Shown piece by piece: positions 12,780 through 55,430 of a stretch of DNA of 64,000 nt. The position numbers and the translations under genes are program-made. This DNA comes from Octopus sinensis (Eukaryota). Below the pieces are notes generated by a model. That model saw only the letters and a program-made list of their open reading frames with translations. It did not search any database and was not told where the DNA came from. Each line of letters begins with the position of its first letter. Position 1 is the stretch's first letter. The stretch is taken from the NCBI RefSeq assembly GCF_006345805.1, contig NC_043010.1, positions 63,240,001 to 63,304,000 of the forward strand. Reading direction: 5' to 3'.

Positions 12780-13194
12780 CTCTTTACTCCTTTGCTCTTT
12801 TACTTGTTTCAGTCGTTTGACTGTGGCCATGCTGGAGCACCGCCTTTAGTCGACCAAATCGACCCAAGGACGTATTCTTTGTAAGCCTAGTACTTATTCT
12901 ATCGGGTTCTGTTTCCGAATCGCTAAGTTACGGGGACGTAAACACACCACCATCGGTTGTCAAGCGATGTTGGGGAGACAAACACAGACACACAAACATA
13001 TACACACACATACATATATATACATATATACGACGGGCTTCTTTCAGTTTCCGTCTACCAAATCCACTCACAAGGCTTTGGTCAGCCCGAGGCTATAGTA
13101 GAAGGCACTTACCCAAGGTGCCACGCAGTGGGACTGAACCCGGATCCATGTGGCTCGTAAGCAAGCAACTTAACACATAGCCACTCCTACGCCT
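12780..13194 (-). mobile_element. tRNA-derived SINE family B (about 410 bp, internal TA/CA microsatellite, AAGAGTA tail)
   Basis: Minus-strand head aggcgtaggagtggctatgtg..ggttcagtcccactgcgtggcaccttgggtaagtg (CORE-like ccttgggcaag). Other copies near 19880-20255, 21410-21800, 23490-23840, 29093-29480, 41620-42190, 44480-44878, 47088-47468 and 61975-62340. Confidence 0.85.
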
Positions 13195-13714: not shown

Positions 13715-14455
13715 CCTTTGTTCACAGCCCCTTATCATTCCTTTGTTCACAGTCCCTTGTTATCCCTTTGTTCACAGCCCTTTGTCATTCCTTTGTTCAC
13801 AATCCCTTGTCATTCCTTTGTTCACAGCCCTTTGTCATTCCTTTGTTCACAGACCTTGTCATTCCTTTGTTCACAGCCCTTTGTCATTCCTTTGTTCACA
13901 GTCCCTTGTCATTCCTTTGTTCACAGTCCCTTGTCATCCCTTTGTTCACAGCCCCTTATCATTCCTTTGTTCACAGTCCTTTGTTATCCCTTTGTTCACA
14001 GCCCCTTATCATTCCTTTGTTCACAGTCCCTTGTTATCCCTTTGTTCACAGCCCTTTGTCATTCCTTTGTTCACAATCCCTTGTCATTCCTTTGTTCACA
14101 GCCCTTTGTCATTCCTTTGTTCACAGACCTTGTCATTCCTTTGTTCACAGACCTTGTCATTCCTTTGTTCACAGTCCCTTGTCACCCCCTTGTTCACAGC
14201 CCTTTGTCATTCCTTTGTTCACAACCCTTTGTCATTCCTTTGTTCACAGTCCCTTGTCATCCCCTTGTTCACAGTCCCTTGTCATTCCTTTGTTCACAGT
14301 CCCTTGTCATCCCCTTGTTCACAGCCCTTTGTCATTCCTTTGTTCACAGTCCCTTGTCATCCCCTTGTTCACAGTCCCTTGTCATTCCTTTGTTCACACC
14401 CCTTTGTCATTCCTTTGTTCACAGTCCTTTGTTCACAGCCCCTTGTCATCCCCTT
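13715..14455. repeat. 25-bp minisatellite, about 30 copies
   Basis: Unit gtcattcctttgttcacagtccctt with few variants and some 23-bp units; no spacers. Confidence 0.95.
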
Positions 14456-15649: not shown

Positions 15650-16678
15650 ATGGAACGGTCAGCCAGCGTACCGTTCCATTACGACATGTACGGGATGCCC
15701 TTTCACCCGGCGCATACCCTACATGCTCCGAGGATGACTCACATTGCCGACAAGTCCATTCATAACACAATCTCTTCAGCCGGGAAGCACTTTCCTCACA
15801 GCAGTGACCATGGCCTCGACACTCAGCGCATGATTCCTATGCAGGATAAAGGCAATCACAGCAATATTTCTGGCAAACACCTCCACCATCGACACTCCTC
15901 ATCGTCGTCGTCATCACATTCCCACAGTTCTCAGAGAATGTCCCATGCAATAGAAAAATCTATGCACCATTCAAGCAGCTCAGGCAAGCAGTTCCCACAT
16001 GACCACACTCTCGATTCACAAAGAATGCTACATGGTATTGAAAAGTCCAGCCAAAATAGCAGCAGCAGCTCTGGCAAGCATTATTCCCATGAACATAACA
16101 TGCAGTCAAGCCAAAGAATCTCACATGAGAAAACAACCCATTCTTCATCAATTTCTGGGAAACAATTTCTGCCAAGTAGCTGCCAAGAAGTTCCAAGGAT
16201 GTCGCATGTTCCAGAGAAAAACATTCACAACAGCATCTCCAGTAAACAGATCTCTTCCCACAGACATAACTTGGAGAAGGAGAGAATAGCCTCACCAGTT
16301 GACAAACCAGACAACAACAGCAACAGCGACCTGTCTGGGAGCCAGTTCTCTCATGAGTCGACTATCGAGAGCCAGAGGCTGCCACTGCCCTATATTGGTC
16401 AGACAGTGTTTCCTGGTAACAATATGTACAGCAGCCAGTATTCTCAGCCATGTTACTTACCGACCACTGACAGAATGCAGTCAAGCTTGGAGGGCGGACA
16501 ATCATCCAAGGAGAGTTCTTCTCAAAAGAGCTCCACTTCTAGTATTGATAAATCATTCCATGGTGATGTGTCTCAAAAACAATACGGCCCGAACAAACTC
16601 TCGCAGAGCTCCATAAAACAACATCAACATCAGCCACATCAACAACAGCCACAGCAACCACCACAACAACAGCAACAA

Positions 16679-16709
<31 letters not shown>

Positions 16710-18436
16710 AACAACATCCTCCACCCCTCAAACAGCTCTTCTGCGATTACTGCGGCAAGAAGTTTGCTCAGGAATATTTGATGCACATGCACCGAAGGAA
16801 ACATACAGGAGAGAAACCGTTCCAGTGCGACATCTGCAACAAACAGTTCTCTCGCAAAGACGTGATGCAGCGACATAAAAAGAATCACACGGATAAAATC
16901 GATCAACCAATGAAAAGCAATGAAAACCATTACCAGTCGATGCCAGTCAATGTTCAAAGAAATGAAATTCAGAATCATGGAAAATTCCAACATCAGAATA
17001 TTTCTCCAAGTTACCAAAGACCACCAACTAATACACAGAAATATCCATCGCAATCTCAGCAGCCCATCTCACAACCTCAGTATCAGATGCAAAAAAACAT
17101 GGGCAGCAATTATCAAGGAATGCCACCAGATATTCCCAGGTTTGAAGAACTACATAACGTTTCTATGAAAAAATCTTATTACTGTGACATATGTCAGAAA
17201 CAGTTTGCTCAGCGCTATTATTTGGCCATTCATAAACGGTCTCACACTGGCGAGAAACCATTCCAGTGTGATTTTTGTATTCAGAAATTTGCCCGCAAAG
17301 ATACATTAAAGATCCACCGTAGAACACACACAGGCGAGACACCTTATCAATGCAATGTTTGTCTTGAAAAATTCTCTCAAAGAATTAAGTTGCAAATTCA
17401 TCAGAAACAGCACATTAGTAAGAAACGGTACCAATGTGATATTTGTCTGAGACATTTCGCACAGCGTTACTACCTGCGAATACATCGCAGGACTCATACC
17501 GGGGAACAGCCTAATCAGTGTGAAGTCTGTCTAAAACAATTTGTACAGAAATACCACCTGGAGATCCACAAGCGGATCCATACTGGGGAGAAACTGTTCC
17601 AATGTGATGTCTGTCTGAAACAGTTCACTCAAAAATACTACCTGGCCATTCATAAGCGAACCCACACGGGAGAGAAACCATTCCAGTGTGACTTTTGCAT
17701 CCAGAAATTTGCTCGCAAAACGACCCTTCAAATTCACCGGAGAACCCATACAGGGGAAAAGCCCTTTAAATGTGAAGTTTGCCTCAAGCAATTTTCCCAA
17801 AGTAGCAAACTAAGAGTTCATCAAAGGACCCACGGACCGAAACGACGCTACCAATGTGATGTTTGTATGAAACTGTTTGCGCAGCGACATTATCTTCAGA
17901 TCCACCAGAGATCCCACACCGGCGAGAAACCGTTCCAGTGTGAGATTTGCTTCAAACAGTTTGCTCAGAGAAACACATTACAGATACACAAGCGAACGCA
18001 CACAGGAGAGAAACCATTCCAGTGTGAAGTCTGCCTCAAGAACTTTGCCCACAAACACTACCTGCAATTGCATAAACGGACCCACACCGGGGAAAAGCCG
18101 TTCCAGTGTGACTTCTGCTTCAAGCAATTCGCACAGAGGAATTCTTTGCAGATGCATCGCAGAACGCATACGGGTGAGAAACCCTTTCAGTGTGAAGTGT
18201 GTTTGAAGGCATTCGCTCAGAGACACTACCTACGACTGCACAAACGAACCCATACAGGGGAGAAGGCCTTCCACTGTGACTTGTGCCCTAAACACTTTGC
18301 TAGGAGCGACACACTACATCGCCACAAGAAGACCCACAACAAGACTGCCAGTAAACCTCCAAAGACTTCTTCGAATTCCATCAACAAAACGGTTGAAGAA
18401 TTTCCTCCTATGAGTACTTATTTGTGGCAACTGTGA
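15650..18436 (+). CDS. C2H2 zinc-finger protein ZNF-A (about 928 aa): Ser/His-rich repeat N-terminus, polyQ, 2 + 14 C2H2 fingers
   Basis: Uninterrupted ORF. The first in-frame ATG is 15650 (aaaATGg), with an in-frame TAG at 15638. Sixteen C-x2-C-x12-H-x3-H fingers with TGEKP-type linkers; first Cys at 16742, 16826, then every 84 nt from 17183 to 18275. Confidence 0.95.
16664..16714 (+). repeat. Coding (CAA/CAG)17 polyglutamine tract
   Basis: 17 consecutive Gln codons, mostly CAA, directly before finger 1. Confidence 0.95.
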
Positions 18437-19711: not shown

Positions 19712-21829
19712 TATTATATGTGTAGCAATCAATTTCGTTGTTTCTTATATTTTTTTTTAAGCTACAAGTATCGAAAATAATCAGACCAGTTTAAAACCTT
19801 TTTGTCTTTCCGATTCTACTTTCATTTTCAAATTGTCTTTTACATCTACAATGTGTGGTGATTGCATGCTTTAAAATGATTGTTTCTTGATTAGGTACAA
19901 GGTGCAGGCGTGGCTGTGTGGTAAGAAGCTTATTTCCCAACCATATGGTTCCGGGTTCAGTCCCACTGCATGGCACCTCAGGCAAATATCTTCTACTATA
20001 GTCTCAGACCAACCAAAGCCTTTGGGTGTATTTGATAGACGGCAATTGAAAGGAGCTTGTGGTATTTGGTGTGTGTTTGTGTTTGTTCCCCTCCAACACC
20101 TTACAACTGGTGTTGCTGTGTTTACATCCCCATAGCTTAGCAGACTAAGAGAATAAGCACCAAAATCAATATACTTGACTAAAAAACTAAAAGTTCTTCA
20201 AGGCAGTGCCCCAGCATGGCCACAGTCTAACGGCACAAACAAGTAAAAGATAAAGGTTAGAAATTTTTGGTAAGGATTAAACTGCAGACCGTGGTTGAAG
20301 CCAATGGTGATTTTATTGAATAAATTTAGCCTTTAGTATTTCAAGATATTTTTATGTAATTTTGGTAAATATATCTGTTAAAATGAGATGTCAGGGTTAT
20401 TTTCCTTTTTGCGTAATTTAGACAACAGTTTATTCACTGCACCCTGTATATATATAAAATGTTTTCTGTGTATATATGCTTGTGCATATATATATATATA
20501 TATTATATATATATATATGTGTGTGTGTATATATTTATACATACATATGTATATATATATACATATATAATATAATATTTTTTGGGTATACATGTCTGTG
20601 TGTATATGTGTGTGTGTGCGCGCGCACGACTGAGCACCCTACCCTTATTCCGACACCACTTTTCTCACTTGTTAGCCATTCCTTATCCATTAATATTGTT
20701 CACCACACCCACATGTCACAATGGCCTTCCCCCTCCCTGGGCCACCAAATTATCCAACTCATGCATTATCTCTGTTTTATCTCTCTGCTCTGCCCCTGCA
20801 GCTTATCCAAACATGTCATATCTCTCCCTTTTTTTTCTCTTCTTCCCAGGCAATTGGCATCGTTACTACCAAACTGCTTGTATCCCTCAGCCTCCCCAAC
20901 TCATACACCTCCTCCCTTCAATCCCTACAGACATTGCCCACCTCCCTCTTCCACTTCCCCTATCTCTTCTCTCACAGACTCTCTCGCAACCTCCCCACCA
21001 GGGCCTTGTTTTCGAGGTGCCATCTGGACAACTCATCATCACTCTCATTCTCTCCCCTAAATATAAGCACCAAGGAGCTCCTCTACAACAAGAGCCTGTT
21101 CTATCCTACCACTTCCCTCATCTCTTTAACCCCCATCTAGTATACAGAGGCAACGTGCTCCATCCCCGGGTCTCTTGACTTGAGAGCTCTATGGTGAGTT
21201 CAGTTGGCATCCAGCACACATTATAAAGTGGTTGGTGTTAGGCAGGACATCCAACCAGAGAAACCATGCCAAAGCTCACACTGGAGTACGATGCAGCCCT
21301 TAACCCATTGGATCCTTGTCAAACTGTCTGACCCATGCCAGCATGGAATAAGGACCTTAAATGAGGATGATGAAACTGCCAATCACCTGATTAGCTACCA
21401 ATGTCAAGGCACAGGAATGGCTGTGTGGTAAGTAGCTTGCTTACCAACCACATGGTTCAGGGTTCAGTCCCACTGCATGGCACCTTGGGCAAGTGTTTTC
21501 TACTATAGCCTCAGGCCAACCAAAGCCTTGTGAGTGAATTTGGTAGACGGAAACTGAAAGAAGCCCATGGTATATATGTATATATATGTGTGTGTGTGTG
21601 TGTGTGTATATGTTTGTATGTCTGTTTGTCTCCCCCAACATCACTTGACAACTGATGCTGGTGTGTTTACGTCTCCCATAACTTAGCGGTTCGGCAAAAG
21701 TACTAGGCTTACAAAGAATAAGTCCTGGGGTTGATTTGCTCGACTAAAGGCAGTGCTCCAGCATGGCCACAGTCAAATGACTGAAACAAGTAAAAGAGAC
21801 ACAAAAGCCAGATAGACTTCGTTCATTCA

Positions 21830-30081: not shown

Positions 30082-30290
30082 GTGATGGTGGTGGTGGTGG
30101 CGGCGGTGGTGGTGGTGGTGGTGGTGGCGGTGGTAGTGGCGGTGGTAGTGGCGGTGGTGGCAGTGATGGTGATGTGGTGGCATTGGTGGTGGTGGTGGCG
30201 GTGGGGATGGTGTTGGTAGTGGTAGTGGTTGTGGTGCCAATGGTGGTAGCAGTAGTGACGGCGGCGGCAGTGGTGGTGGTGTAGACAAGC
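30082..30290. repeat. (GGT)n/(GGC)n/(AGT)n trinucleotide array
   Basis: Directly visible. Confidence 0.9.
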
Positions 30291-30641
30291 AGAAGTAGGA
30301 GTAGTAGTAACAGTAGGGATGCTAGTGCTAATGGAGGTGTTGTAGCATGTCGGATGGCAGAGGCAGAGACAGTAAATCAATGAGTATCAGATGGGCGTGG
30401 TCCATCTGACCCTTTTCACCCACCCCCTACCCCATCCTTCATTTCCATAGTTACCAACCAACTATGATGCCAGTTTGCTGTTCAAGCACAACACCAACCA
30501 CTAAGCCATCATTCAACCCTACCACCCCACGCTACTCCCCACCCCGGTCCATATTCTGCAGGGGCGGGGAGGCAGGAAGGGGTCACAGTGGATGATTAGT
30601 GCAGACTTTTGGATTTGTTACATGGCTCAGAATCCCCCTCA

Positions 30642-30745
30642 ATATCATCATCACTGTCATCATTATTGTCATCATCCACATCATCATCATCATCATCCAC
30701 ATCATCATCATCGTCGTCGTCGTCATCATCGTCATCACCATCACC

Positions 30746-30779
<34 letters not shown>

Positions 30780-30784
30780 TCATC

Positions 30785-30818
<34 letters not shown>

Positions 30819-30951
30819 TCCACATCATCATCATCATCACATCATCATCATCCACATCATCATCATCGTTGTCGTCGTCATCATCATCATCATCATTATC
30901 ATCATCATCTACATCATCATCAACCACATCATCATCAACCACATCATCATC

Positions 30952-30983
<32 letters not shown>

Positions 30984-31400
30984 CATCATCATCACTATCA
31001 TCATCATCATCATCATCATCATCATAATCATCATCATCATCATCATCATCATTGTTGTCATTATCCTCATCATCATCATCATTATCATTGTCATCATTGA
31101 CATCATCATCAGTATCATAGTCTATGTCATCATCATCATCAGCAGCAGCAGAATCAGTATCATCATCATCATCATTACCGTTATCATCATGATCAACACC
31201 ATTACAGCCACTACCGTCACTACCGCCACATTACCATTACCATCATCATCACTATCACCACCACCGTCACCATCACTACCATCATGAAAATTACCAACAT
31301 CCCTAATCATCATCACTGCAACCATCATTATCACCATCATCATCATAATAATTACCACCATCCCTACCACCACCTCCACTCCCATCATCATCAACACTAC
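30642..31400. repeat. (CAT)n/(CAC)n trinucleotide array
   Basis: About 760 bp of CAT with CAC, CGT and TAT variants. Confidence 0.95.
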
Positions 31401-31416
31401 ATACTAAGCTTTCAGA

Positions 31417-32247
31417 TATCAGTTGCAGACAGTGTGATATCAATTGTGAACAATGTGATATCAGTTGTGGACAGTGTGATATTTGTTGTGGATAGTGTAA
31501 TATCAGTTGGGAGCAGTGTGTTATCAATTGTGAACAATGTGATATCAGTTGTGGACAGTGTGATATTTGTTGTGGATGGTGTAATATCAGTTGGGAGCAG
31601 TGTGATATCAATTGTGAACAATGTGATATCAGTTGTGGACAGTATGATATCAGTTGTGGACAGTGTGATATTTGTTGTGGATGGTGTAATATCAGTTGGG
31701 AGCAGTGTGATATCAATTGTGAACAATGTGATATCAGTTGTGGACAGTATGATATCAGTTGTGGACAGTATGATATTTATTGTGGATGGTGTAATATCAG
31801 TTGGGAGCAGTGTGACATCAATTGTGAACAATGTGATATCAGTTGTGGACAGTATCATATCAGTTGTGGACAGTATGATATTTGTTGTGGATGGTGTAAT
31901 ATCAGTTGGGAGCAGTGTGATATCAATTGCGAACAATGTGATATCAGTTGTGGACAGTATGATATCAGTTGTGGACAATATGATATTTGTTGTGGATAGT
32001 ATGATATCAGTTGGAGGCAGTGTGATGTCAGTTGTGGACAGTATGATATCAGTTGTGGACAGTATGATATTTGTTGTGGATGGTGTAATATCAGTTGGGA
32101 GCAGTGTGATATCAATTGTGAACAATGTGATATCAGTTGTGGACAGTATGATATCAGTTGTGGACAGTATGATATTTGTTGTGGATAGTGTGATATCAGT
32201 TGGAGGCAGTGTGATGTCAGTTGTGGACAGTGAGATATCAGTTGTAG
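31417..32247. repeat. 21-bp minisatellite with higher-order structure, about 39 units
   Basis: Unit tgatatcagttgtggacagtg; four variant monomers recur in ordered 84-bp and 105-bp blocks. Confidence 0.95.
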
Positions 32248-32540
32248 ACATATATCTAGCAACAGGTTTGGCCCTGTATCATTTAAACCAGCCAAAATCC
32301 AGTTCAAATTTTCTACATGTTTTACAGTCAAACTGGCCACATCCAACCTCTCACACCTGACCTACACTAACATTCTAAAACTAAACAATCACTTAACTGA
32401 AACCGCAAAGTTACAAGATAGTGTGTGATTGGTTCAAAACAATTTAAATAAAAAGAGCATCAAGTTCTATATTTAAGAGATGAGGAATTATGTACATTGT
32501 TTACATTTGACGGATATTTGTCTTCATCTTGTTTGTTGTT

Positions 32541-35149: not shown

Positions 35150-38024
35150 TTTATTATTATTATTATTATTACTATTATTGACAGGATGGTGAGCTAGCAG
35201 AAAAGTTAGCACATTGGACAAAATACTTGGTTCTGAGTTCAAATTTCTGCCAAGATTAACTTTACCTTTCATCTTTTTAGGGGTCAATAAATTAAGTACC
35301 ATTTGCATACTGGGTCGATCTAATTGATTGGCCCCCTCTCCTGAAATTTATTGAGGTGGCGAGCTGTCAGAATTGTTGGCACACTGGACAAAATACTTGA
35401 AGGCATTCCATCCATTTTTATGTTCTGAGTCCAAATACCCCCAAGGTTGACTTTGCCTTCCATCCTTGCAGGGTCAATAAAATAAATACCAGTTGAACAC
35501 TGGGGTAGATGTAATCGACTTAATCCCTCCCCAGGGAATGGCAGTGGTCATTTTGGGGTTCTTTCACTTGTGCTTAAGACCATGACACTCTCATATTCCT
35601 GATCCTGTGACCCGTATTGGCACTGGGTATCTTGTCCTAGCTTGTCTCTGAATCATGTTAGTAGGATGGAGAGGTAGTGTGAAGTGTGGAGCAAGCCTTT
35701 GTGGACCTAGAATATGAGGTTGTGCGATCACCTCTCACGCTACTATCCAATGCCTAGTGGGGCTGGGGGATGCTGTGGTGGGCATGGGATCTGTGGATGC
35801 AAACCCAGGTGAAGCTGGCTGCCGGTGCAATAACCCCATGCATGAGCACTTCTGGCATTTGCATGGACAATGGTCAGTGATTGCCTTCCTTGGTCAAGTG
35901 TAGACAACCATCACTGTCGTTGTCATCATCGTCATCACCACCACCACCACCACCACCACCATCAACATCATCATCATCACCACCACCACCATTATAGGAA
36001 ACTTGGAGTCACTTCCATTATTTGTGATTATGACCATTAAACTATACCTACATACATACATACATACATACGTACGTACGTACATACATACATACATACA
36101 TATACCCACTATTTTAAATTTGGCAGTGACAGTTAGACTATGCTCTGCTGCTGATGTTCTCATAATAATAGAGTCTGTCAAAGTCCAGGCCACTCGTTAC
36201 TGCTGTTTGCTTTTAATTAATTTGAATTAAAATCTTGGGGTTACCGCCCTTCCCTTTCTAGATCAGAATTAACCATTCTGATAATTTAAAAATACAAAAA
36301 AAAAAGCGACATTAAATATGTTAACGCCCACTCTTCTAATAGCTTTTTTCCCGCAGCAGGGGCCTGTGAGCAGTTTACCTTGGTCATTTGGCTTTAGGAA
36401 GGGCATCTGGCCGTAAAAGCCATGTCAAAACAGAAATGGGAGCTTGGTGCAGCACGCTCGCTTGTCAGATCCTGTCAAGCCGTCCAACCCATGCTAGCAT
36501 AGAAAATGGACTTTAAATGATGATGATGATCATCATCATGATTATCATGATCATTCTATTCATCAAATTTCGAGTATATATCCAAGGTCTCACACAGCAC
36601 AACATAAAAAATGACGTTTCTAACGGCATGTTTCAACACTAGCCATATGCTGTCTCCTCATCTTTTTACTGAAAACATGATATAAATATAGGAATTATAT
36701 GTACAATTATTGTAGTTTCTTTCAGCACAAACATTCACATTAAGCAGCCATCCAAATCTAGTCTACTTTACTATTTTTTTTAAACTGAACAAAATGACAT
36801 GTCAAACTGCATGCTAACCTGTTGTCGACCAATGACATCACCTCCTTGGAAAAGCCTCTTTACGTGGTCATTCGATCTATTGACGATCGCAACAATATTT
36901 CCTTAAATATCACCCTTCTGTCTTAAAACATGAAAGGCACAATGGACAATGTAGTTCTAAATAAATAGAAAGAGTTGTTGGTCACGGTTGGGATGCCTTT
37001 GATAACAGGTTTGCTCAATCATGGCTGACCTCGGGCTAAACAATGACTAGACTGGGTTTTTATAACCTATTTCGAAAATTGATTTAACATTTCTCAACAA
37101 TATATGCAGAAAGCATTTGTCGATACGTTCAACCAATATATATTTATAAGTAATCTTAAGACATTCATTATATAATATGAAGTTAGAGCGGAACTGGCCC
37201 CAGATTAATACAGCTTTAGGCCAACCCCTTATCCCAGCAATAGAATAAGAAACCTTATGATACCCATTTATCCCTTTCATTATAACAACCAGAAAATGTA
37301 GTCGTAAATTTGCAGTCAGGTCAACTGTACAATGTACGCTCGAAAGATTAGTAAACTAGCGAATAAGAAATCTATAGTTTTATGACCTTGTTATGTCACT
37401 AAGAAAATCTGTTACTGGGACAAATTTGAAATATTTTACGCCAGATCAGATGACAGGACATAACACCATACGATTCTTTCGACTGCATCCCTGTATAGTC
37501 ATGTCCTCCATCCTTCTTTGCTCTGGAAATAACATCGGTTGTTTTCTTTATTAAGTTTACGTGTTTATAATAAGACGATGCGATTTTGAGTTATTCGCGA
37601 CGCCCCGATTTTAGCGCCTCGGGTGACCGTCTGATTTACGAAGTGCATAGCGCCGGTCCTGGTTATGAGTTCATTCAAATTTTTCGGTGAAATATTCTGT
37701 TACTAATAATATAACTCACTGCGGACGCAATCCCGTTAAACTAAAGCAATCATGGAGCTTCAGAGTTCGATACTTATCATTCCTTTTTCTCTTATATGAC
37801 AAATCTTAAATAAAGCCCAAGAACGCATCAACAGAATAAAAATATTTAATTAATTCTTGACGAAGGCTGGACAATGAACTAGATTGGGACCTCGGTTTTT
37901 TCTTGAAGTCTGAAAGCATCAAATGTTGAAATCTGCAAATGTCGCGACGTAGAATATCGTCGAAGTCTGAATGAAACTGTCCCGTTCTCTGAAGAAGAGT
38001 TCATTCTTCGGCATACTGACATTC

Positions 38025-38809
38025 TGTTTCTTTATTACAAACAAGGGGCTAAACACACAGAGGGGACAAACAAGGACAGACAAACGGATTAAGTCGATTA
38101 CATCGACCCAGTGCGTAACTGGTACTTAATTTATCGACCCCAAAAGGATGAAAGGCAAAGTCAACCTCGGCGGAATTTGAACTCAGAACGTAACGGTAGA
38201 CGAAATACCTATTTCTTTATTACCCACAAAGGGCTAAACACAGAGGGGGACAAACAAGGACAGACATAGGTATTAAGTCGATTACATCGACCCAGTGCGT
38301 AACTGGTACTTAATTTATCGACCCCAAAAGGATGAAAGGCAAAGTCAACCTCGGCGGAATTTGAACTCAGAACGTAACGGTAGACGAAATACCTATTTCT
38401 TTATTACCCACAAAGGGCTAAACACAGAGGGGGACAAACAAGGACAGACATAGGTATTAAGTCGATTACATCGACCCAGTGCGTAACTGGTACTTAATTT
38501 ATCGACCCCAAAAGGATGAAAGGCAAAGTCGACCTTGGCGGAATTTGAACTCAGAACGTAACGGTAGACGAAATACCTATTTCTTTATTACCCACAAAGG
38601 GCTAAACACAGAGGGGGACAAACAAGGACAGACATAGGTATTAAGTCGATTACATCGACCCCAGTGCGTAACTGGTACTTAATTTATCGACCCCGAAAGG
38701 ATGAAAGGCAAAGTCGACCTCGGCGGAATTTGAACTCACAACGTAACGGTAGACGATTTACCGCTAAGCATTTCGCCCGGTGTGCTAACGATTCTGCCAG
38801 CTCGCCGCC
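38025..38809 (-). mobile_element. SINE family A four-unit concatemer inside a single 18-bp TSD
   Basis: Period about 184 bp (cgaaat at 38201, 38385, 38569; cga at 38754). TSD ttcggcatactgacattc at 38007-38024 and 38810-38827. Only the rightmost (5') unit has the A-box head. Confidence 0.92.
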
Positions 38810-40379: not shown

Positions 40380-40965
40380 GAAACTGTCTACATTGTTTGA
40401 CACCGGTCCGACGACAGGTCCAATTACCACCACTATCATCATTATCATAATTAAATGCTCTTTCTTACTGTCTGCTATATTTAAGTCCCTCCATCCATTC
40501 ATACGTCCACCCATACATACACCCGCTGCACTTTGTGTCAGTTCAAACACATCCACCCACTGCTCTGCTCTCTCTCGCCATTTACTGAATTCTTTTGAAA
40601 GTCCGTTCGTCGTTTTTTTAAAAATACAATGGTGTTTGTCTAAAAACTACAAACATATACATCTACGCATACAGAACGCATTCGTGTAGATATGTATTCA
40701 CAATTTAATAAACACATACAAATTCAGTTTAAATACATATACATATATATATGTATGAATGAAAGACAGAGCGGAAGGTAGGACACACGCACACACACAC
40801 ATACACACACACGCTCGCACGCACGCGCATACATACTCACGCACGCGCACACGCTCTCACGCACGCGCATACATTCAGAGAGTGGGAGGGAGGGAGAGAG
40901 AGAAATGGAATGGCCGTCAGTCCATTAGCGGCGATATATCATCAACCTCCACTTCTACCACCACC

Positions 40966-40999
<34 letters not shown>

Positions 41000-47045: not shown

Positions 47046-48989
47046 ATGCCAGCCAAAGAATTATCACATATTATATTACAGATATAGCAGGAGTGGCTGT
47101 GTGGTAAGTAGCTTGCTTACCAACCACATGGTTCCGGGTTCAGTCCCACTGCGTGGCACCTTGGGCAAGTGTCTTCTACTATAGCCTCGGGCCAACCAAA
47201 GCCTTGTGAGTGGATTTGGTAGATGGAAACTGAAAGAAGCCCGTCATATATATGTATATATATATGCGTGTCTGTGTTTGTCCCCCTAGCATTGCTTGAC
47301 AACCGATGCTGGTGTGTTTATGTCCCCGTTACTTAGCGGTTCGGCAAAAGAGACCGATAGAATAAGTACTGGGCTTACAAAAGAATAAGTCCCGGGGTCG
47401 AGTTGCTCGATTAAAGGCGGTGCTCCAGCATGGCCACAGTCAAATGACTGAAACAAGTAAAAGAGTATATATGACCCTATGTGATCACCTGAAAATCTAG
47501 TAGGTGTGTGTGTTTGTATGTATAGATATATGTATGTGTGTGTCATGTTGAATGCATTTGGATCCCACTGACCCGTCTCCCTCACACTTCCCTGTCCCTT
47601 ACCACCCCTGCAACCCACATTTCTTACAAGGTTTGTATCCTCCAGCAACTGTTGTACAGATGTTCAGCAACCTCTCTGCCTCTTCTTCTTTTGTCACTTA
47701 CTGGTTCCCATAGTAATGGTTGGTGTACAACTTCATCTCTTTTCTCTGCCATAAACTCAAACCTGTATTGTTTGATGGTTTCTTTTAATAATGCCATAGT
47801 TCCATGTAATAATACTGTTCAGTAAATGTTGCTTCTGTCTATTTCGGTTTGGTTTCTATGGCCGGATGCCCTTCCTAAAGCCAATCAGTTTAAAGAGTGT
47901 GCTGGGTGCACTTATGTAGCACTGACACCTACAAGACAAGACCTCTCACCTGGGAGAGGGGATGGGGCCACGGCCGTAAAGGACATGCCAATATGTATGG
48001 ATGGTTGCAATTTTGCTTAGCTTGACATGTCTTCTCAAGTACTGCAAATTGCCACAAGTCATGGTCCCTTGTCAAATTGCCATAAGTCCGGGTCCCTTGT
48101 CCCAGATATATATATATATATATCATCATCATCATCATCATCATCATCATACGTCCGCTTTCCATGCTAGCATGGGTTGGACGGTTCAACCAGGGTCTTG
48201 GAGGCCAAGAGGCTGCACCAGGCTTCAGTCTGATCTGGTAGTGTTTCTACAGCTGGATACCCTCTTAACGCCAACCATTCCGTGAGTGTAGTTGGGTGCT
48301 TTTTACGTGCCACTGGCACAGGGGCCAGGCGAGGCTGGCAAACGGCCACGATCAGATGGTGCTTTTTACGTGTCACCGACACAGACACCTGTGAGGCAAT
48401 ATATATATATATATATTTATTATTAAAATTAATCAAAGAACATATTAAGTATATCTGCCTGCTGGAAATAACAGTCAAAACTCTTATTTAAATCGCCAAA
48501 GAACACTGATAATAACTACAGATATCAGCCATCCGAATGCAAACGGGCTAAGACAAAATCCCAACGTTCAGTCATGGGTGAGGGGAATATATTAAGGACA
48601 GGGATTTTACAGCCAGATGCCCTTCTGGAGTTGAAAGGTTGCTTCCCAGCCGCATGGGTTCATGTTCAGTCCTGCTGGGTGGAACTTTGGGCAAGTGTCT
48701 TCTACTAGAACTTTCTTATGTGGTGCTGGCACAAGTGTCTTTTACGTGGCACCAGCACGGCTGCTTTTTATGCAACACCAGCATCCGTTTCCAATATTTT
48801 TTGAAAGAGGTGACGATTGGCAACAGAAAGGCCATCTGGCCATAGAAAATCTGTCTCAATTTAATCCGACCCATGCAATCTTGGAAAGAGGGTGAATAAA
48901 ATAATAATTGATATGGATGTAAGCAAGCGTGTGTGTGTGTATTTACAATTATACTTTTATACAACTGTCTGTATTTGAGATTTGCTCTA

Positions 48990-49170
48990 CCCTTCTTCTT
49001 CTTGCTTTTCTTCCTCTTCTTCTTCTTCTTGCTTTGCTTCTTCTTCCACTTCTTCCTTTTCTTCTTCTTCCACTTCTTCCTTTTCTTCTTCTTTTTCTTC
49101 TTCTTCCATTTCTTCTTTTCTTCTTGCTTTTTTCTTCTTCCACTTTTTCTTCTTCTTCTTCCACTTCCTT

Positions 49171-49201
<31 letters not shown>

Positions 49202-50400
49202 ATTTCTTCCTTTTCTTCTTCTTCTTTTCCTCTTCTTCTTCTTCTCTTCCATTTTTCTCTTTCCTTCCTTTTCTTCTTCTTGCTTTCCTTCTTCTTCCAC
49301 TTCTTCTTCTTCTTCCTCTTCTTCTTCTTCCACTTTTTCTTCTTCTTCCACTTCCTTTTCTTCTTTTTCCATTTCTTCCTTTTCTTCTTCTTGCTGTCCT
49401 TCTTCTTCTTGATTTTCTTCTTCCTCTTCTTCTTCTTGATTTTCTTCTTCCACTTCTTCTTCCATTTCTTCCATTTCTTCTTCTTCCCTTTCTTCTTCTT
49501 CCCTTTCTTCTTCTTCTTCTTTTTCTTCCACTTTTCTTCTCTCTTCTTCTTGTCTCTTCTCTCTTCTTTTCTCCACTTCTTCTTTGTCCTCTTCTTCACT
49601 TCTTTTTCTTCTTCTTCTTCCACTTTCTTCACTCTTCTTTGTCCTCTTCTTCTTCTTCTTCTTCTTTCTTCCCTTCTTCTTTGTCCTCTTCTTCCACTTC
49701 TTCTTCTTCTTCTTGCTTTCCTTCTTCTCCCTTCTTTTTATTCTTCTTCTTCTTCCACTTCTTCTTTGTCCTCTTCTTCCACTTCTTCTTCTTCTTCCAC
49801 TTCTTCTTCCACTTCTTTTTTGACCTCTTCTTCCACTTCTTTTTCTTCTTCTTCCACTTCTTCTTCTTCTTCTTCCACTTCTTCTTTGTCCTCTTCTTCC
49901 ACTTCTTTTTCTTCTTCTTCTTCCACTTCTTCCACTTCTTCTTTGTCCTCTTCTTCTTCTTCTTGCTTTCCTTCTTCTTCCACTTCTTTTTCTTCTTCTT
50001 CTTCCACTTCTTCTTTGTCCTCTTCTTCCACTTCTTTTTCTTCTTCTTCTTGCTTTCCTTCTTCTTCCACTTCTTTTTATTCTTCTTCTTCTTCCACTTC
50101 TTCTTTGTCCTCTTCTTCCACTTCTTCTTCTTCTTCCACTTCTTCTTCCACTTCTTTTTTGACCTCTTCTTCCACTTCTTTTTCTTCTTCTTCCACTTCT
50201 TCTTTGTCCTCTTCTTCCACTTCTTTTTCTTCTTCTTCTTCCACTTCTTCTTTGTCCTCTTCTTCTTCTTCCACTTCTTTTTCTTCTTCTTCATTGTCCT
50301 CTTCTTCTTCTTGCTTTTCTTCTACTTCTTCTTCCACTTCTTCCTCTTCTCCTCCTCCTCCTTCTTTTCCTGGTTTAATTTTTCCTCCTCTTTCTTTCTT
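48990..50400. repeat. 1.4-kb (CTT)n-based polypyrimidine tract with internal higher-order duplications
   Basis: CTT/CCACTT/TTTGTCCT mosaic; the block at about 49710-49860 recurs at about 50050-50200. Confidence 0.95.
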
Positions 50401-52579: not shown

Positions 52580-53837
52580 CATATATATATATGCACATTC
52601 ACACACATAATATATTCCTTTATTTTGTTGAGGTTTCTTTGCTGAGTGCAGTTAAGAACATCAGCAACTGCAACAATAACAACAAACACTACACTAAGTG
52701 CACCTAATCTGATCTCTCTCCTCCCCCCACCACCACCATCCTCTTAAAAGTCGTCCCTGGGGAAAGAAAGGTTCGTATTAGCAATTATTTTTAGTTTGTC
52801 TCGTCAAGTTAAGGCTTCTTCTTTTAACGACCCACCCCTAAACACTGACACACACACAGTTTCGTTTCTTTTTTTTTTGCGGTGTTTTTTTTTTTTAATT
52901 GTTAATTAAATTTTGTTTTTGTTGACTGAAACCTGTTACTACTACTGCTACTAGTATTATTCTGTGAGTAGTGCAACTGGTGCAGGTGTTAGTAAGTCAA
53001 CTTAGATGCTTTAATTGTATCCAGCTCAGTGTCTCGCTGTCTCCGAGTTCAGTTCATACCTGGCTACAGGGAGCAACGTTGCCTTTCATCCCTCCACGGT
53101 CGATCAAACAACCACCAGTAACATATACTAGAGTTCAGCTGTATATGCTCCTTCCCTACTAAATGTGGCCGTCTACCTACTGAAGGAAGAAAAAGCAAAA
53201 TTACCTTTATTAGTATTAGTAACCTACAACAGGGTCAGTATATGGTGCCCTTGGCCACAACGCAAACCCAAGGTTTACCCATCCCTTGGTAAGACACTTA
53301 TTATTATCATTAATATCCTCAACAGTAAGATACATTCATAGTTTGCTGCCAGAATCATTACTTGTCAAGGGTAATTGACAGCCGAGCAAAACGTCCTACC
53401 TCTGTTACATTTCTGAGATCTTGTCTTCAGGAGGACAACAGTGATTCCTGTCACAGAAGCCTCTTGTGTTAGTGTCAGTTCAATGCAATAGAAGTCATTG
53501 ATTAAAATAGTTAGATAATTCCATATTTGTCTTTAAGTTAAAAGAAAATTTACTGAAGACAATCTTAAGAGTTTCCAGTTTTATATTCGCTGGGATCTTC
53601 CTGCTTTTGAAAGACAACAGGAAATATCACATATATATTAATTTATTAACTCACAATTATGTCTGAGTAAAAGTGACATATTTTTTTTTAAAAAAGCCAG
53701 TATATATTAAGAAAACCCAGAACTAAACTGAATAAAATAAAAGGATTGTTTTAATTATAATTAATAATTCTGTAATCATAAATAAGGTATTTTAGGCTAT
53801 TTAACTAAGGGCAGAGTTCTCCTATCTCTTCTTCAAG

Positions 53838-55196
53838 ATGTGTTCTAATTCAGCTGTACAATACCCTCCCATTACAAACCATGTGAACTACCATGCCTGT
53901 AGTTTAGCGTACTCTCAGGTCGGCATCACTCCCTCCTACCTCAGTTATAAGCAGAGGTATATTGAAAAGAAGCCCTATAAATGCAATATCTGCCGTAAGC
54001 GGTTTGCATTAAGAGCCTACCTGAAGAAACATGAAATGGCTCCTGAGGCCGGCAAACATTTCACATGTATGTTTTGCGGTAAAGCTTTCCCGGAGCGTGA
54101 CAAACTGCGTAATCACGAACGTACTCACACCGGTGAGAGACCCTTCCCTTGTGAGCTTTGTGATATGGCTTTTGCTCAGAAAGATAAGTTGAAGATCCAT
54201 CAACTGACCCACACCGGCAGCAAACCCTTTCAGTGTACTATATGCCACAAAGCCTTCTCTAGAAACGATAAACTTAAAATACACACCCGTTCTCACACAG
54301 GAGAGCGGCCTTTTGAATGCTTAATTTGTCGTCGCGCGTTCTCTCGCAACGACAAGTTAAAGCTGCATCAGCGGTCGCACACGGGTGAAAAACCATTTGA
54401 GTGCCCCGTTTGTCAACGGTGTTTTTCACGCAATGACAAGCTGAAAATTCATGAGAGATCACACACAGGGGAGAAACCATTTAGCTGTGGGATTTGTCAG
54501 AAAGCTTTCTCTCGTAAGGACAAGATGAAAATTCATGAATTCACACACAGTGGGGAAAAGCCATTTAGTTGTTCGCTCTGCTCAAAGTCCTTCTCTCGCA
54601 AGGACAAGCTAAAACTGCACGAGTTTACGCATTCAGGACAGAAGCCTTACAGTTGCGAAATATGCCGCCGTGCATTCTCTCGCAACGACAAGCTGAAGTT
54701 GCACCAGCGCACACACATAGCCAGTGCCATGGGTACAGAGGAGAACAAGATGAACAAATGCGACAAAGATTACACCATGGCTGCTGCGGCTGCACCACCA
54801 CCACTGCCACCTCAACGATGCAACGTTGATAAACACAGCCAGTGTCACGCAGGGAACCACGCTGTCACCACACTGGTTGCATCTGCACCAACTTCGGTGC
54901 AGTCTTCGTCTATGATACCAACACCAGCTGCATGTTCACACCAAAGAATGCCCTCTCACTTGCCACATCTGCCACAGCTCCCACCGCTCACCCTCAACTC
55001 TCCTCCCATGGCCACGGCCTGCTCTCACCAGATGTCGGCTTTGAACAACTTCAACTGGAAGAGAAACGTTCCCCCCATGACGTCCACGTGGACTACAAAC
55101 TGGGGTAACACCCTCAGCGTGCCGTCCTACAGCATCGGACAGAGGAAGTGTGAGAACCAGGAAGCAGTACACAGCATTCAAACCTTAATGCACTAA
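53838..55196 (+). CDS. C2H2 zinc-finger protein ZNF-B (452 aa as read; 1 degenerate + 8 intact fingers, Pro/Ala/His-rich C-terminus)
   Basis: Uninterrupted ORF; finger Cys every 84 nt from 53982 to 54654 with TGE[KR]P or SGEKP linkers; finger 1 lacks its second His. The true N-terminus is uncertain because acceptor-like AGs lie at 53795-96, 53836-37 and 53852-53. Confidence 0.93.
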   Translation: MCSNSAVQYPPITNHVNYHACSLAYSQVGITPSYLSYKQRYIEKKPYKCNICRKRFALRAYLKKHEMAPEAGKHFTCMFCGKAFPERDKLRNHERTHTGERPFPCELCDMAFAQKDKLKIHQLTHTGSKPFQCTICHKAFSRNDKLKIHTRSHTGERPFECLICRRAFSRNDKLKLHQRSHTGEKPFECPVCQRCFSRNDKLKIHERSHTGEKPFSCGICQKAFSRKDKMKIHEFTHSGEKPFSCSLCSKSFSRKDKLKLHEFTHSGQKPYSCEICRRAFSRNDKLKLHQRTHIASAMGTEENKMNKCDKDYTMAAAAAPPPLPPQRCNVDKHSQCHAGNHAVTTLVASAPTSVQSSSMIPTPAACSHQRMPSHLPHLPQLPPLTLNSPPMATACSHQMSALNNFNWKRNVPPMTSTWTTNWGNTLSVPSYSIGQRKCENQEAVHSIQTLMH

Positions 55197-55424: not shown

Positions 55425-55430
55425 AATAAA
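55425..55430 (+). promoter_or_regulatory. Candidate polyadenylation signal of ZNF-B
   Basis: AATAAA about 230 nt after the stop codon. Confidence 0.35.

What the first reader, a model, noticed from the sequence alone, without database searches (positions are those of the whole stretch)
53976..54716. ZNF-B is a homopolymeric finger array, a candidate microsatellite-reading protein
Seen: fingers 4-9 have helices RNDKLKI, RNDKLKL, RNDKLKI, RKDKMKI, RKDKLKL and RNDKLKL, and fingers 2-3 share DKL. The codons differ widely (tct aga aac gat aaa ctt; tct cgc aac gac aag tta; tca cgc aat gac aag ctg), as do non-helix residues, so recent duplication does not explain the uniformity. Established (Zif268-type code): Arg-1 with Asp+2 reads a 3' G, Asp+2 favours T/G at the adjacent triplet, Lys+3 favours G/T, and Ile/Leu+6 is non-specific. 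Inferred: the target is 18-24 bp of (TGG)n/(GTG)n or (TTG)n, which are abundant microsatellites here. This would be a host factor that binds or regulates simple repeats.
Basis: partly seen in the sequence, partly recalled or inferred. Interest (0 to 1): 0.8.

Follow-up and report, generated by a model that had tools for sequence, protein, structure and literature searches.

The report
Octopus zinc-finger gene, six matching fingers
An intact but unannotated Octopus sinensis zinc-finger gene carries six consecutive fingers with identical DNA-reading residues, kept that way by selection since an old internal duplication; this predicts, but does not show, binding to GG-every-3-bp DNA such as (TGG)n microsatellites.

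Summary
Window 53838-55196 (+) is one 452-aa ORF. It holds a degenerate N-terminal finger, eight canonical C2H2 fingers and a 159-aa tail. Synonymous sites between fingers are saturated, and helix identity is 81% against 40% for scaffold positions.

The window is Octopus sinensis. ZNF-B is an old, diverged paralogue of a cephalopod-restricted gene with four canonical fingers (O. vulgaris, O. bimaculoides, Argonauta). It shares that gene's odd first finger and its C-terminal motif. The extra fingers look like serial copies of the family's third finger (RNDKLKI). So the uniformity comes from ancient internal duplication followed by purifying selection.

The target is inferred only. ZBTB7A finger 2 (RQDKLKV, solved with DNA) and the engineered module RSDKLVR (=GGG) indicate that each finger reads (G/T)GG. 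Six fingers would then read (KGG)6. In this window only (TGG)n/(CGG)n microsatellites fit, at five loci. (TTG)n is not supported.

I found no orthologue, annotation, expression evidence or binding data. This is an unusual variant of a known kind, of moderate interest.

The parts
53838..55196 (+). Complete ZNF-B coding sequence: 452 codons plus stop, apparently one coding exon.
   Evidence: ORF found. The start (M-C-S-N) aligns with the starts of the single-exon paralogues (M-Y-A-N, M-Y-S-N). GC is 48.6% against 29-33% in the flanks, and the other two + frames carry 18 and 31 stops. Pfam finds only C2H2 families.
53818..53837 (+). Polypyrimidine tract ending in AG directly before the ATG. It looks like a 3' splice site and may mark a 5'-UTR intron.
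   Evidence: Read directly from the sequence. It is absent upstream of the paralogues' ATG. No transcript evidence was available.
53976..54059 (+). Degenerate 'finger 0' (aa 47-74): YKCNICRKRFALRAYLKKHEMAPEAGKH. It has Cys-X2-Cys-X12-His, but the usual second His is replaced by Pro, and the next His lies 9 residues on.
   Evidence: The motif KKHE(M/L)APExGKHF is invariant in Octopus, Argonauta and the Logan homologues.
54060..54143 (+). Finger 1 plus linker, helix ERDKLRN. It corresponds to finger 1 of the four-finger paralogues.
   Evidence: It matches ancestral finger 1 at 13 of 16 non-helix positions.
54144..54227 (+). Finger 2 plus linker, helix QKDKLKI. It corresponds to paralogue finger 2 (RKDKLKN).
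   Evidence: Both share the unusual (D/P)MAF segment.
54228..54716 (+). Fingers 3-8, the homotypic block. Helices are R(N/K)DK(L/M)K(I/L) six times; the linkers are TGERP, TGEKP, TGEKP, SGEKP and SGQKP.
   Evidence: F3, F4 and F6 are closest to ancestral finger 3 (RNDKLKI). F4/F5 and F6/F7 are each other's nearest fingers, at 11 of 16 positions.
54717..55046 (+). Low-complexity, poorly conserved part of the tail (Ala/Pro/Ser/His-rich).
   Evidence: No Pfam family.
55047..55193 (+). Conserved C-terminal motif of the family: NWKRN..S(T/S)W..W..L(S/T)(V/I)PSY..RK.(E/D)NQ...(Q/H)(T/S)L(M/I).
   Evidence: Alignments. An exhaustive search of 1.84 billion representatives with the N-terminus plus tail found only the P0121 cluster.
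55425..55430 (+). First AATAAA downstream of the stop, a possible poly(A) signal.
   Evidence: Pattern match only.
30083..30204 (+). Impure (TGG)n/(CGG)n microsatellite. It is an example of the predicted target type, not part of the gene.
30735..30803 (-). (TGG)5-6 runs inside a (TGA)n tract. One stretch (30741-30760) matches (NGG)6-TGA exactly; that is the pattern predicted for fingers 8 to 2.
35932..35964 (-). (TGG)n microsatellite, with an exact (NGG)6-TGA match at 35935-35954.
40955..40984 (-). (TGG)8 microsatellite.
52721..52741 (-). Short TGG/GGG-rich tract 1.1 kb upstream of the ZNF-B ATG.
   Evidence: one mismatch.

Best explanation
ZNF-B is an intact, probably single-coding-exon C2H2 zinc-finger gene of Octopus sinensis (about CM016872.1:63,293,838-63,295,196). 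It is an old, fast-evolving paralogue of a small cephalopod-restricted zinc-finger gene. That gene has a degenerate N-terminal finger, four canonical fingers (ERDKLKI, RKDKLKN, RNDKLKI, RKDHLNK) and a conserved C-terminal motif.

In ZNF-B the family's third finger (RNDKLKI) was copied several times inside the array, long ago. Since then the helix residues of all copies have been held fixed while synonymous sites and scaffold residues drifted. This gives six tandem, canonically linked fingers with Arg-1, Asp+2, Lys+3 and Ile/Leu+6.

By structural and engineering precedent, each such finger should read two guanines (5'-NGG-3'), with Asp+2 favouring G or T at the adjoining position. The block should therefore prefer at least 18 bp of GG at a 3-bp period, that is (G/T)GG repeated six times. 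The next finger, F2 (Gln-1), should read NGA. In the octopus DNA examined, only (TGG)n/(CCA)n microsatellites, some interrupted by CGG, meet that pattern.

Shown: the gene anatomy, the paralogy, the age of the duplications and the helix-specific conservation. Inferred: the DNA target. Speculative: a biological role at microsatellites.

My confidence by layer is about 0.85 for the anatomy and evolutionary origin, about 0.5 for a periodic NGG target, and about 0.25 for a dedicated microsatellite function.
For: Anatomy.

Species: the locus carrying ZNF-A is 100% identical to GCA_006345805.1, which is O. sinensis.

Family: the shared KKHE(M/L)APExGKHF finger, the first three helices and the C-terminal NWKRN...PSY..RK..NQ motif.

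Paralogy and age:
- O. vulgaris P0249 and O. bimaculoides P0250 are the orthologues of Argonauta P0122. For Argonauta against O. vulgaris, amino-acid identity is 93%, dS 0.93, dN 0.032.
- ZNF-B against either of them has a proportion of synonymous differences of 0.90-0.93 (saturated) and dN 0.22.

Internal duplication: the finger-matching table.

Selection on helices. Eleven DKL-type helices in the neighbouring paralogue are identical between Octopus and Argonauta.

Rarity.

Reading rule:
- In ZBTB7A finger 2, Arg421 and Lys424 each bond a guanine. Asp423 bonds the opposite-strand cytosine of the adjacent base pair. Val427 makes no base contact, so the finger recognises two bases (PMC8553545).
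- RSDKLVR is the GGG module (PMC6146835; PMC5260015).
- Hydrophobic residues at contact positions give variable bases (PMC12264921).

Target availability: (KGG)6 with at most one mismatch gives 27 matches at 5 loci against 0 expected. Every (GGN)6 match is a TGG/CGG microsatellite. There are two exact (NGG)6-TGA sites.
Against: - There is no binding, expression or orthologue evidence. The exact product is not in the gene-position index or the protein collection, and no protein carrying this tail from any Octopus was found.
- Positions +1 (Asn/Lys) and +5 (Lys), which do not usually contact bases, are also conserved. The constraint may therefore be on the whole helix face rather than on base reading.
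- Six fingers that each read only two of three bases give a degenerate site. Any G-rich tract could compete with it.
- The four-finger paralogues have the same helix types without the amplification, which suggests the ancestral role was ordinary G-rich-box binding.
- The AlphaFold model was uninformative beyond finger 4.
Confidence: 0.55

Rival explanations
1. ZNF-B is an ordinary G-rich-box transcription factor. Like its four-finger paralogue, and like ZBTB7A, MAZ or Sp/KLF-type factors, it binds short G-rich promoter or enhancer elements with two to four fingers at a time. The extra identical fingers add avidity or let the protein bind in several registers. Microsatellites would then be incidental sites, not the function.
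For: The ancestral paralogues already carry three DKL fingers plus an RxDHL finger, and these are strictly conserved from Octopus to Argonauta with dN/dS about 0.03. That pattern is typical of a conserved regulator. ZBTB7A fingers 1-2 alone are sufficient for binding. The conserved C-terminal motif suggests a shared effector function.
Against: Six canonically linked fingers with invariant -1/+2/+3 residues have been maintained past synonymous saturation. This is hard to explain if only two or three are used. In this window, every sequence long enough to engage all six is a microsatellite.
Confidence: 0.25
2. The conserved helix face is not a duplex-DNA reader. The strongly basic R-(N/K)-D-K-L-K surface, repeated six times, might bind RNA, single-stranded or G-quadruplex DNA, or a protein partner.
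For: The non-contact positions +1 and +5 are conserved as strongly as the base-contact positions, and Ser at -2 is invariant. G-rich TGG repeats can form non-B structures (general knowledge). A literature link between zinc fingers and G-quadruplex or Z-DNA binding exists (PMC12539977, listed; I did not read it).
Against: The TGEKP-type linkers and the Arg-1/Asp+2 pair are the hallmark of duplex-DNA-binding arrays. There is no positive evidence for RNA or protein binding. The weak Pfam zf-C2H2_jaz and zf-met hits have no independently significant stretch.
Confidence: 0.12
3. ZNF-B is a silent relic: a duplicated gene that is no longer used, whose open frame survives by chance.
For: It is not present as a called gene with this product. 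It is absent from the protein collection. No orthologous protein was seen in O. vulgaris or O. bimaculoides annotations.
Against: The ORF is an uninterrupted 452 codons, although synonymous divergence from its paralogues is saturated. All 32 zinc ligands, the Phe and the Leu/Met core residues of the eight fingers are intact. Non-synonymous change is far below synonymous change. The other frames carry 18-31 stops. Absence from the databases is weak evidence, because even the annotated ZNF-A is missing from the protein collection.
Confidence: 0.06
4. The uniform helices result from recent tandem duplication or ongoing gene conversion among the fingers.
For: Tandem Repeats Finder reports an 84-bp period over 54422-54608 at 78% match.
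Against: Finger units are only 44-69% identical at the nucleotide level, and synonymous sites are saturated. Identical amino acids use different codons, and scaffold residues are 40% identical.
Confidence: 0.02

Closest known systems
Cephalopod four-finger paralogue family: O. vulgaris CAI9733359.1 'replication initiator 1-like', O. bimaculoides XP_052828934.1 'Krueppel homolog 1-like', Argonauta hians GAB1604197.1 'zinc finger protein 25-like', and the Logan cluster P0121
   Same: Same start, and the same degenerate first finger KKHE(M/L)APExGKHF. The first three helix types are the same (ERDKL...KDKLK., RNDKL..). The C-terminal NWKRN...PSY..RK..NQ motif is shared, as is the single coding exon.
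   Different: ZNF-B has eight canonical fingers rather than four, lacks the terminal RxDHL finger, and has a diverged middle tail. It is separated from these genes by saturated dS and dN 0.22, and it lies at another locus. It is a paralogue, not the orthologue.
Neighbouring DKL-rich cephalopod zinc-finger gene (O. bimaculoides XP_014771513.2 'ZFP2', Argonauta 'zinc finger protein 2 homolog')
   Same: Most fingers carry x-x-D-K-L-x-(I/V/L), and 6 of 13 carry R/D/K. The helices are identical between Octopus and Argonauta. It lies next to the four-finger gene.
   Different: The R/D/K fingers are interrupted by other types, so the longest run is 2. The N- and C-termini are different.
Human ZBTB7A/LRF zinc finger 2 (helix RQDKLKV), solved with DNA (PDB 7N5W, 7EYI and others)
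   Same: Same base-contact residues: Arg-1, Asp+2, Lys+3 and an aliphatic residue at +6. The structure shows Arg contacting G, Lys contacting G, Asp contacting the opposite-strand C, and no contact from +6. ZBTB7A chains are among the PDB sequence hits.
   Different: In ZBTB7A this is one finger of four in a BTB-domain protein. ZNF-B has no BTB domain and repeats the finger six times. The resemblance is in mechanism, not family membership.
Engineered zinc-finger modules and repeat-targeted arrays (RSDKLVR = GGG; GGAA-repeat-targeted arrays)
   Same: R-x-D-K-L helices are used to specify GG-containing triplets. Arrays of like fingers have been designed to bind microsatellites genome-wide (PMC9374162).
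   Different: Those are designed proteins with Arg at +6. ZNF-B is natural and has Ile/Leu at +6.
ZSCAN4, a natural zinc-finger protein that binds (CA)n/(TG)n microsatellites
   Same: It is a natural C2H2 protein whose genomic targets are microsatellites (PMC7083622 and PMC10785592).
   Different: ZSCAN4 has a SCAN domain and four non-identical fingers. It recognises a TGCACAC-type motif within dinucleotide repeats, not one repeat unit per finger.
Lineage-specific C2H2 expansions in coleoid cephalopods, and transposon-targeting zinc-finger arrays
   Same: ZNF-B sits 36 kb from another poly-zinc-finger gene (ZNF-A) in a genome known for C2H2 expansion. Binding sites of these genes are an acknowledged open question (PMC12513265; PMC10547256).
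   Different: Arms-race arrays diversify their contact residues. ZNF-B and its relatives conserve them. There is no KRAB or other effector domain.

Membership tests
Classical C2H2 (Krueppel-type) zinc-finger protein | Tandem C-X2-C-X12-H-X3-H units with conserved Phe and Leu core residues | tested here: met
   Eight complete units. Pfam zf-C2H2 E = 2.5e-44 with 9 stretches, and zf-H2C2_2 E = 1.3e-57.
Classical C2H2 (Krueppel-type) zinc-finger protein | TGEKP-type linkers between fingers, a mark of DNA-binding arrays | tested here: met
   The linkers are TGERP, TGSKP, TGERP, TGEKP, TGEKP, SGEKP and SGQKP.
Cephalopod four-finger zinc-finger family (P0249/P0250/P0122/P0121) | N-terminal degenerate finger with KKHE(M/L)APExGKHF | tested here: met
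   Invariant in the alignments.
Cephalopod four-finger zinc-finger family (P0249/P0250/P0122/P0121) | C-terminal NWKRN...PSY..RK..NQ motif | tested here: met
   An exhaustive search finds it only in this family.
Cephalopod four-finger zinc-finger family (P0249/P0250/P0122/P0121) | Exactly four canonical fingers ending in an R-x-D-H-L finger | tested here: not met
   ZNF-B has eight fingers and its last helix is RNDKLKL.
Cephalopod four-finger zinc-finger family (P0249/P0250/P0122/P0121) | Orthology (one-to-one relationship, same locus) | tested here: not met
   O. vulgaris has its own orthologue of the Argonauta gene, at 93% identity. ZNF-B is 72-74% identical with saturated dS. The flanks of L005 and L001 share only dispersed repeats with the window.
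KRAB, SCAN, BTB or ZAD zinc-finger families | An N-terminal effector or oligomerisation domain | tested here: not met
   No Pfam family other than zinc fingers is found in the whole protein, the N-terminus or the tail.
Microsatellite-binding proteins (a functional class, e.g. ZSCAN4) | Demonstrated preferential binding to a simple repeat in vitro or in vivo | not testable with these tools
   Only a code-based prediction and the presence of matching repeats.
Coleoid or octopus-specific C2H2 expansion clades (Holzinger et al. 2025) | Placement in one of the published expansion clades, and nervous-system expression | not tested
   The paper was read. No gene-level tree or expression table was examined, and ZNF-B is not in the protein collection.

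The most novel reading that the evidence does not exclude
ZNF-B is a dedicated reader of (TGG)n/(CCA)n microsatellites that docks one finger per repeat unit. It would then be a natural protein built by finger amplification to match the 3-bp period of a simple repeat. It could act on very many such repeats across the octopus genome, for example to mark, stabilise or silence them, or to use them as regulatory elements.
Probability: 0.25. Interest if true: 0.7.

Novelty: new variant of a known kind. Interest (0 to 1): 0.45.

Why it matters
Cephalopod genomes carry hundreds to thousands of lineage-specific C2H2 genes, and their DNA targets are unknown; the 2025 survey names this as the next open question. 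ZNF-B gives an unusually clean prediction that can be tested with one recombinant protein and a few oligonucleotides: six identical-reading fingers should bind (G/T)GG repeated six times. If the prediction holds, it would be a natural example of a zinc-finger array matched one finger per unit to a trinucleotide repeat. It would also link the cephalopod zinc-finger expansion to simple repeats rather than only to transposons. If it fails, it shows that strong conservation of 'recognition' residues can reflect something other than base reading. ZNF-B also illustrates conservation of contact residues across internally duplicated fingers, the opposite of the diversification seen in arms-race arrays.

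Tried and rejected
- Whole-protein homology search: swamped by generic poly-zinc-finger proteins. It was useful only for the comparator set and the cephalopod hits P0055, P0061 and P0063.
- Profile search with the N-terminus, finger 1 and tail: returned only short generic zinc-finger proteins and not even the known relatives. Uninformative.
The single-sequence version found only the P0121 cluster.
- Exact look-ups of ZNF-B: nothing found. The ZNF-A look-up showed that O. sinensis proteins are missing from the protein collection, so absence there means little.
- Synteny test by aligning 10-kb flanks of the Argonauta and O. vulgaris paralogue loci to the window: only dispersed repeats matched. 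These are different loci, and the flanks are too short to walk the cluster.
- Identifying the species behind Logan run SRR9970012, the source of P0121: not found. It therefore stays open whether the duplication predates the octopus-squid split.
- AlphaFold2 on the three-sequence alignment: mean pLDDT 46.7. The model was confident only over fingers 1-4, where the alignment has depth. It gave no information on fingers 5-8 or the tail, so no fold search was run.
- PDB sequence search: generic top hits (ZNF568, Aart, CTCF). It was useful only for pointing to the ZBTB7A structures.
- Hypothesis that Argonauta P0122 is the orthologue and the array grew from 4 to 8 fingers within Octopus: rejected once O. 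vulgaris and O. bimaculoides four-finger orthologues were found hidden in another cluster.
- (TTG)n as a target: rejected, because Lys+3 reads G in all the evidence found.
Full report
**1. What is at the coordinates**

Window 53838-55196 (+) is one uninterrupted 452-codon ORF. The finding's span, 53976-54716, is exactly the zinc-finger region, from Tyr47 to the last His of the last finger.

The protein has four parts:
- a 46-aa N-terminus;
- a degenerate 'finger 0' (C-X2-C-X12-H, then HEMAPEAGKH instead of H-X3-H);
- eight canonical C-X2-C-X12-H-X3-H fingers spaced every 84 nt from 54060, joined by TGEKP-type linkers;
- a 159-aa tail.

Pfam sees only C2H2 families. There is no KRAB, SCAN, BTB or ZAD domain. 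Helices at positions -1 to +6 are ERDKLRN, QKDKLKI, RNDKLKI, RNDKLKL, RNDKLKI, RKDKMKI, RKDKLKL and RNDKLKL. The observation and the quoted codons are correct.

**2. Is it more than chance, and is it recent duplication?**

It is not recent duplication. The 84-nt finger units are 44-69% identical in nucleotides. The proportion of synonymous differences between any two is 0.64 to about 1, which is saturated.

Within F3-F8 the pattern is helix-specific:
- Positions -1, +2 and +3 are 100% identical.
- The six helix positions other than the structural Leu are 81% identical.
- The 11 variable scaffold positions are 40% identical.
- Four of the 6 helix columns are invariant, against 1 of the 11 scaffold columns.

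I also examined 133 other zinc-finger proteins with at least 6 fingers. They came from the hits most similar to ZNF-B, which makes the comparison conservative. In them, the longest run of fingers sharing one (-1,+2,+3) triple is at most 4 and the median is 1. ZNF-B has a run of 6. The triple R/D/K occurs in 2.7% of 1908 fingers. The uniformity is real, unusual, and maintained by selection on the helix.

**3. Where it comes from**

The neighbouring gene ZNF-A (window 15650-18433, 928 aa) is on record in GCA_006345805.1, chromosome CM016872.1. The fetched locus is 100% identical to the window. That assembly is Octopus sinensis. ZNF-B therefore lies at about CM016872.1:63,293,838-63,295,196.

ZNF-B itself is not on record as a gene product and is not in the protein collection. 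ZNF-A is also missing from the protein collection, so that absence carries little weight.

**4. Relatives**

A search with only the N-terminus and tail found two proteins. One is Argonauta hians 'zinc finger protein 25-like' (P0122, 408 aa). The other is a Logan-assembly protein of unknown species (P0121, 404 aa). Cluster look-up then revealed O. vulgaris CAI9733359.1 (P0249, 407 aa) and O. bimaculoides XP_052828934.1 (P0250, 405 aa). These had been hidden in another cluster because an old gene model fused two adjacent zinc-finger genes.

All of these relatives share the following with ZNF-B:
- the start (M-Y-A/S-N against M-C-S-N);
- the odd first finger (KKHE(M/L)APExGKHF, invariant);
- the first three helix types;
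- a C-terminal motif, NWKRN..S(T/S)W..W..L(S/T)(V/I)PSY..RK.(E/D)NQ;
- a single coding exon.

They have only four canonical fingers: ERDKLKI, RKDKLKN, RNDKLKI and RKDHLNK. An exhaustive HMMER scan of 1.84 billion representatives with the N-terminus plus tail found only this family. As far as can be detected, the family is restricted to cephalopods.

**5. Paralogue, not orthologue**

Over 149 aligned codons:
- The Argonauta and O. vulgaris four-finger genes differ by dS 0.93 and dN 0.032 (ratio 0.03, 93% identity).
- ZNF-B against either has a proportion of synonymous differences of 0.90-0.93 (saturated) and dN 0.22.
- ZNF-B against P0121 has dN 0.26. P0121 against the four-finger genes has dN 0.15.

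O. vulgaris, which split from O. sinensis about 2.5 Mya, keeps the four-finger gene at another locus. That locus shares only dispersed repeats with the window.

ZNF-B is therefore a separate, faster-evolving paralogue whose origin predates the Octopus-Argonauta split. Its ORF and all its zinc ligands have stayed intact over that time, and the other two frames carry 18 and 31 stops. This argues that it is, or long was, a functional gene.

**6. How the array was built**

I matched fingers on the 16 non-helix, non-ligand positions:
- F1 matches ancestral finger 1 at 13 of 16 positions.
- F2 matches ancestral finger 2, sharing the unusual (D/P)MAF segment.
- F3, F4 and F6 are closest to ancestral finger 3, whose helix is already RNDKLKI.
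- F4/F5 and F6/F7 are each other's nearest fingers, at 11 of 16.
- F8 is ambiguous.

The simplest reading is serial internal duplication of finger 3, long ago, with loss or conversion of the terminal RxDHL finger. The signal from 16 positions is thin, so this step is an inference.

The same conservative behaviour appears in the neighbouring paralogue (O. bimaculoides 'ZFP2' and Argonauta 'ZNF 2 homolog'). Its eleven x-x-D-K-L-type helices are identical between the two genera. This clade conserves its contact residues. It does not behave like an arms-race array.

**7. What the fingers should read**

The best precedent is the ZBTB7A-DNA crystal structure (PMC8553545). Its finger 2 has Arg421 (-1), Asp423 (+2), Lys424 (+3) and Val427 (+6). 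In the structure:
- Arg and Lys each hydrogen-bond a guanine.
- Asp pairs with the Arg and accepts a bond from the cytosine on the opposite strand of the adjacent base pair.
- Val makes no base contact. The authors call this 'one finger-two base recognition'.

Two further lines agree. The engineered module RSDKLVR is used for GGG (PMC6146835; PMC5260015). A recent review states that aliphatic residues at contact positions leave the base variable (PMC12264921).

Each of F3-F8 should therefore read 5'-NGG-3', with the neighbour's Asp+2 favouring G or T at N. F2 (Gln-1) should read NGA. F1 (Glu-1, Asn+6) is less clear.

The predicted core is (G/T)GG repeated six times. (TGG)n and (GTG)n are the same repeat and fit this core. 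G-runs also fit. (CGG)n and (AGG)n are not excluded. (TTG)n is not supported, because I found no evidence that Lys+3 reads T. No trained motif predictor could be run offline, so this prediction rests on precedent and is an inference.

**8. Are such sequences present?**

Yes.
- (KGG)6 with at most one mismatch gives 27 matches at five loci: 30083-30204 (+), 30738-30803 (-), 35935-35964 (-), 40955-40984 (-) and 52721-52741 (-). None is expected from shuffles.
- Every (GGN)6 match in the window is a TGG microsatellite, some interrupted by CGG.
- Two sites match (NGG)6-TGA exactly, the pattern predicted for fingers 8 to 2.

By total length, other repeats dominate the window: CTT, ATC, TA, AC and CTAT. 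'Abundant' is fair for the number of loci, not for rank.

**9. What remains unknown**

- There are no binding data, no transcripts and no true orthologue.
- Positions +1 and +5, which normally do not contact bases, are as conserved as the contact positions. The constraint could be on the whole basic helix face, for example for phosphate contacts, non-B DNA, RNA or a partner protein.
- Natural arrays often use only some of their fingers.
- The AlphaFold model was poor outside fingers 1-4 because the alignment had only three sequences.

**10. Comparison and verdict**

ZNF-B is a classical C2H2 protein. It is a diverged member (paralogue) of a small cephalopod-specific family, and fails that family's four-finger architecture and orthology tests. 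In mechanism, its fingers resemble ZBTB7A finger 2 and engineered GGG modules. As a concept it sits near ZSCAN4, a natural zinc-finger protein that binds (CA)n repeats (PMC7083622), and near designed repeat-targeting arrays (PMC9374162). The targets of cephalopod C2H2 expansions are an acknowledged open question (PMC12513265; PMC10547256).

The finding is a real and unusual variant of a known kind. It is a homotypic finger block made by old internal duplication and held by purifying selection, with a sharp and cheap-to-test target prediction. Interest is moderate (0.45). The microsatellite-reader reading is possible (about 0.25) but untested.

Noticed in passing
window 53976-54059; also P0249, P0250, P0122 and P0121: The first 'finger' lacks the canonical second His, which is replaced by Pro. 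It has a His 9 residues after the first His, where the linker Pro normally sits. The segment KKHE(M/L)APExGKHF is invariant across all family members. This suggests a conserved non-classical zinc site or capping module.
   Followed up: partly
window 15650-18436 (+): ZNF-A is a 928-aa single-ORF poly-zinc-finger gene, annotated in GCA_006345805.1. It has a long Ser/His-rich N-terminus and a poly-Gln run encoded by an (AAC/CAA)n microsatellite at 16617-16716. It carries about 18 fingers whose helices alternate between Q-R-Y/H-Y-L and R-K-x-T-L types, mostly with Ile/Leu at +6. That is a two-finger periodicity, seen by Tandem Repeats Finder as a 168-bp period.
   Followed up: partly
protein P0251 (O. 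bimaculoides XP_014771513.1, 1089 aa): An old gene model fuses two adjacent zinc-finger genes: the 658-aa 'ZFP2' and the 405-aa four-finger gene. Because of it, the 90% clustering files the four-finger proteins under an unrelated representative (P0055), which hid them from the homology searches.
   Followed up: yes
protein P0088 (Logan, 791 aa): Another array with quasi-periodic helices (QKINLDN / QQINLRN / QQGNLxx recurring). It has an N-terminal finger ending HEMTH and a Trp-rich C-terminal tail, and it covered 100% of ZNF-B at 31% identity. It may be a distant relative with a different repeated helix set.
   Followed up: no
window 53818-53837: A strong polypyrimidine-AG sequence lies immediately before the ZNF-B ATG and looks like a 3' splice site. 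It is absent upstream of the paralogues' start codons.
   Followed up: partly
window 30583-31287 and 31415-32250: A roughly 700-bp mixed (ATC)n/(CCA)n tract produces long His/Ile-rich pseudo-ORFs on both strands. It is followed by an 84/105/189-bp minisatellite (GATATCAGTTGTGGACAGTGT-type units) of about 840 bp.
   Followed up: no
window 48992-50366: A 1.4-kb impure (CTT)n/(AAG)n microsatellite creates 200-500-aa pseudo-ORFs rich in Lys/Glu or Phe/Ser/Leu in several frames.
   Followed up: no
window 38027-38756; L005 17222-17829: A 184-bp unit is repeated four times at 97% identity. It is 87% identical to a tract near the O. vulgaris paralogue, so it is a dispersed tandem-repeat or SINE-like family shared by the two species. 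Other short dispersed elements (e.g. window 13031-13131, 21470-21565, 47146-47241) are shared with Argonauta loci.
   Followed up: no
window 13715-14432: A 25-bp tandem repeat of about 29 copies (87% match) lies just upstream of ZNF-A and gives long pseudo-ORFs in three frames.
   Followed up: no
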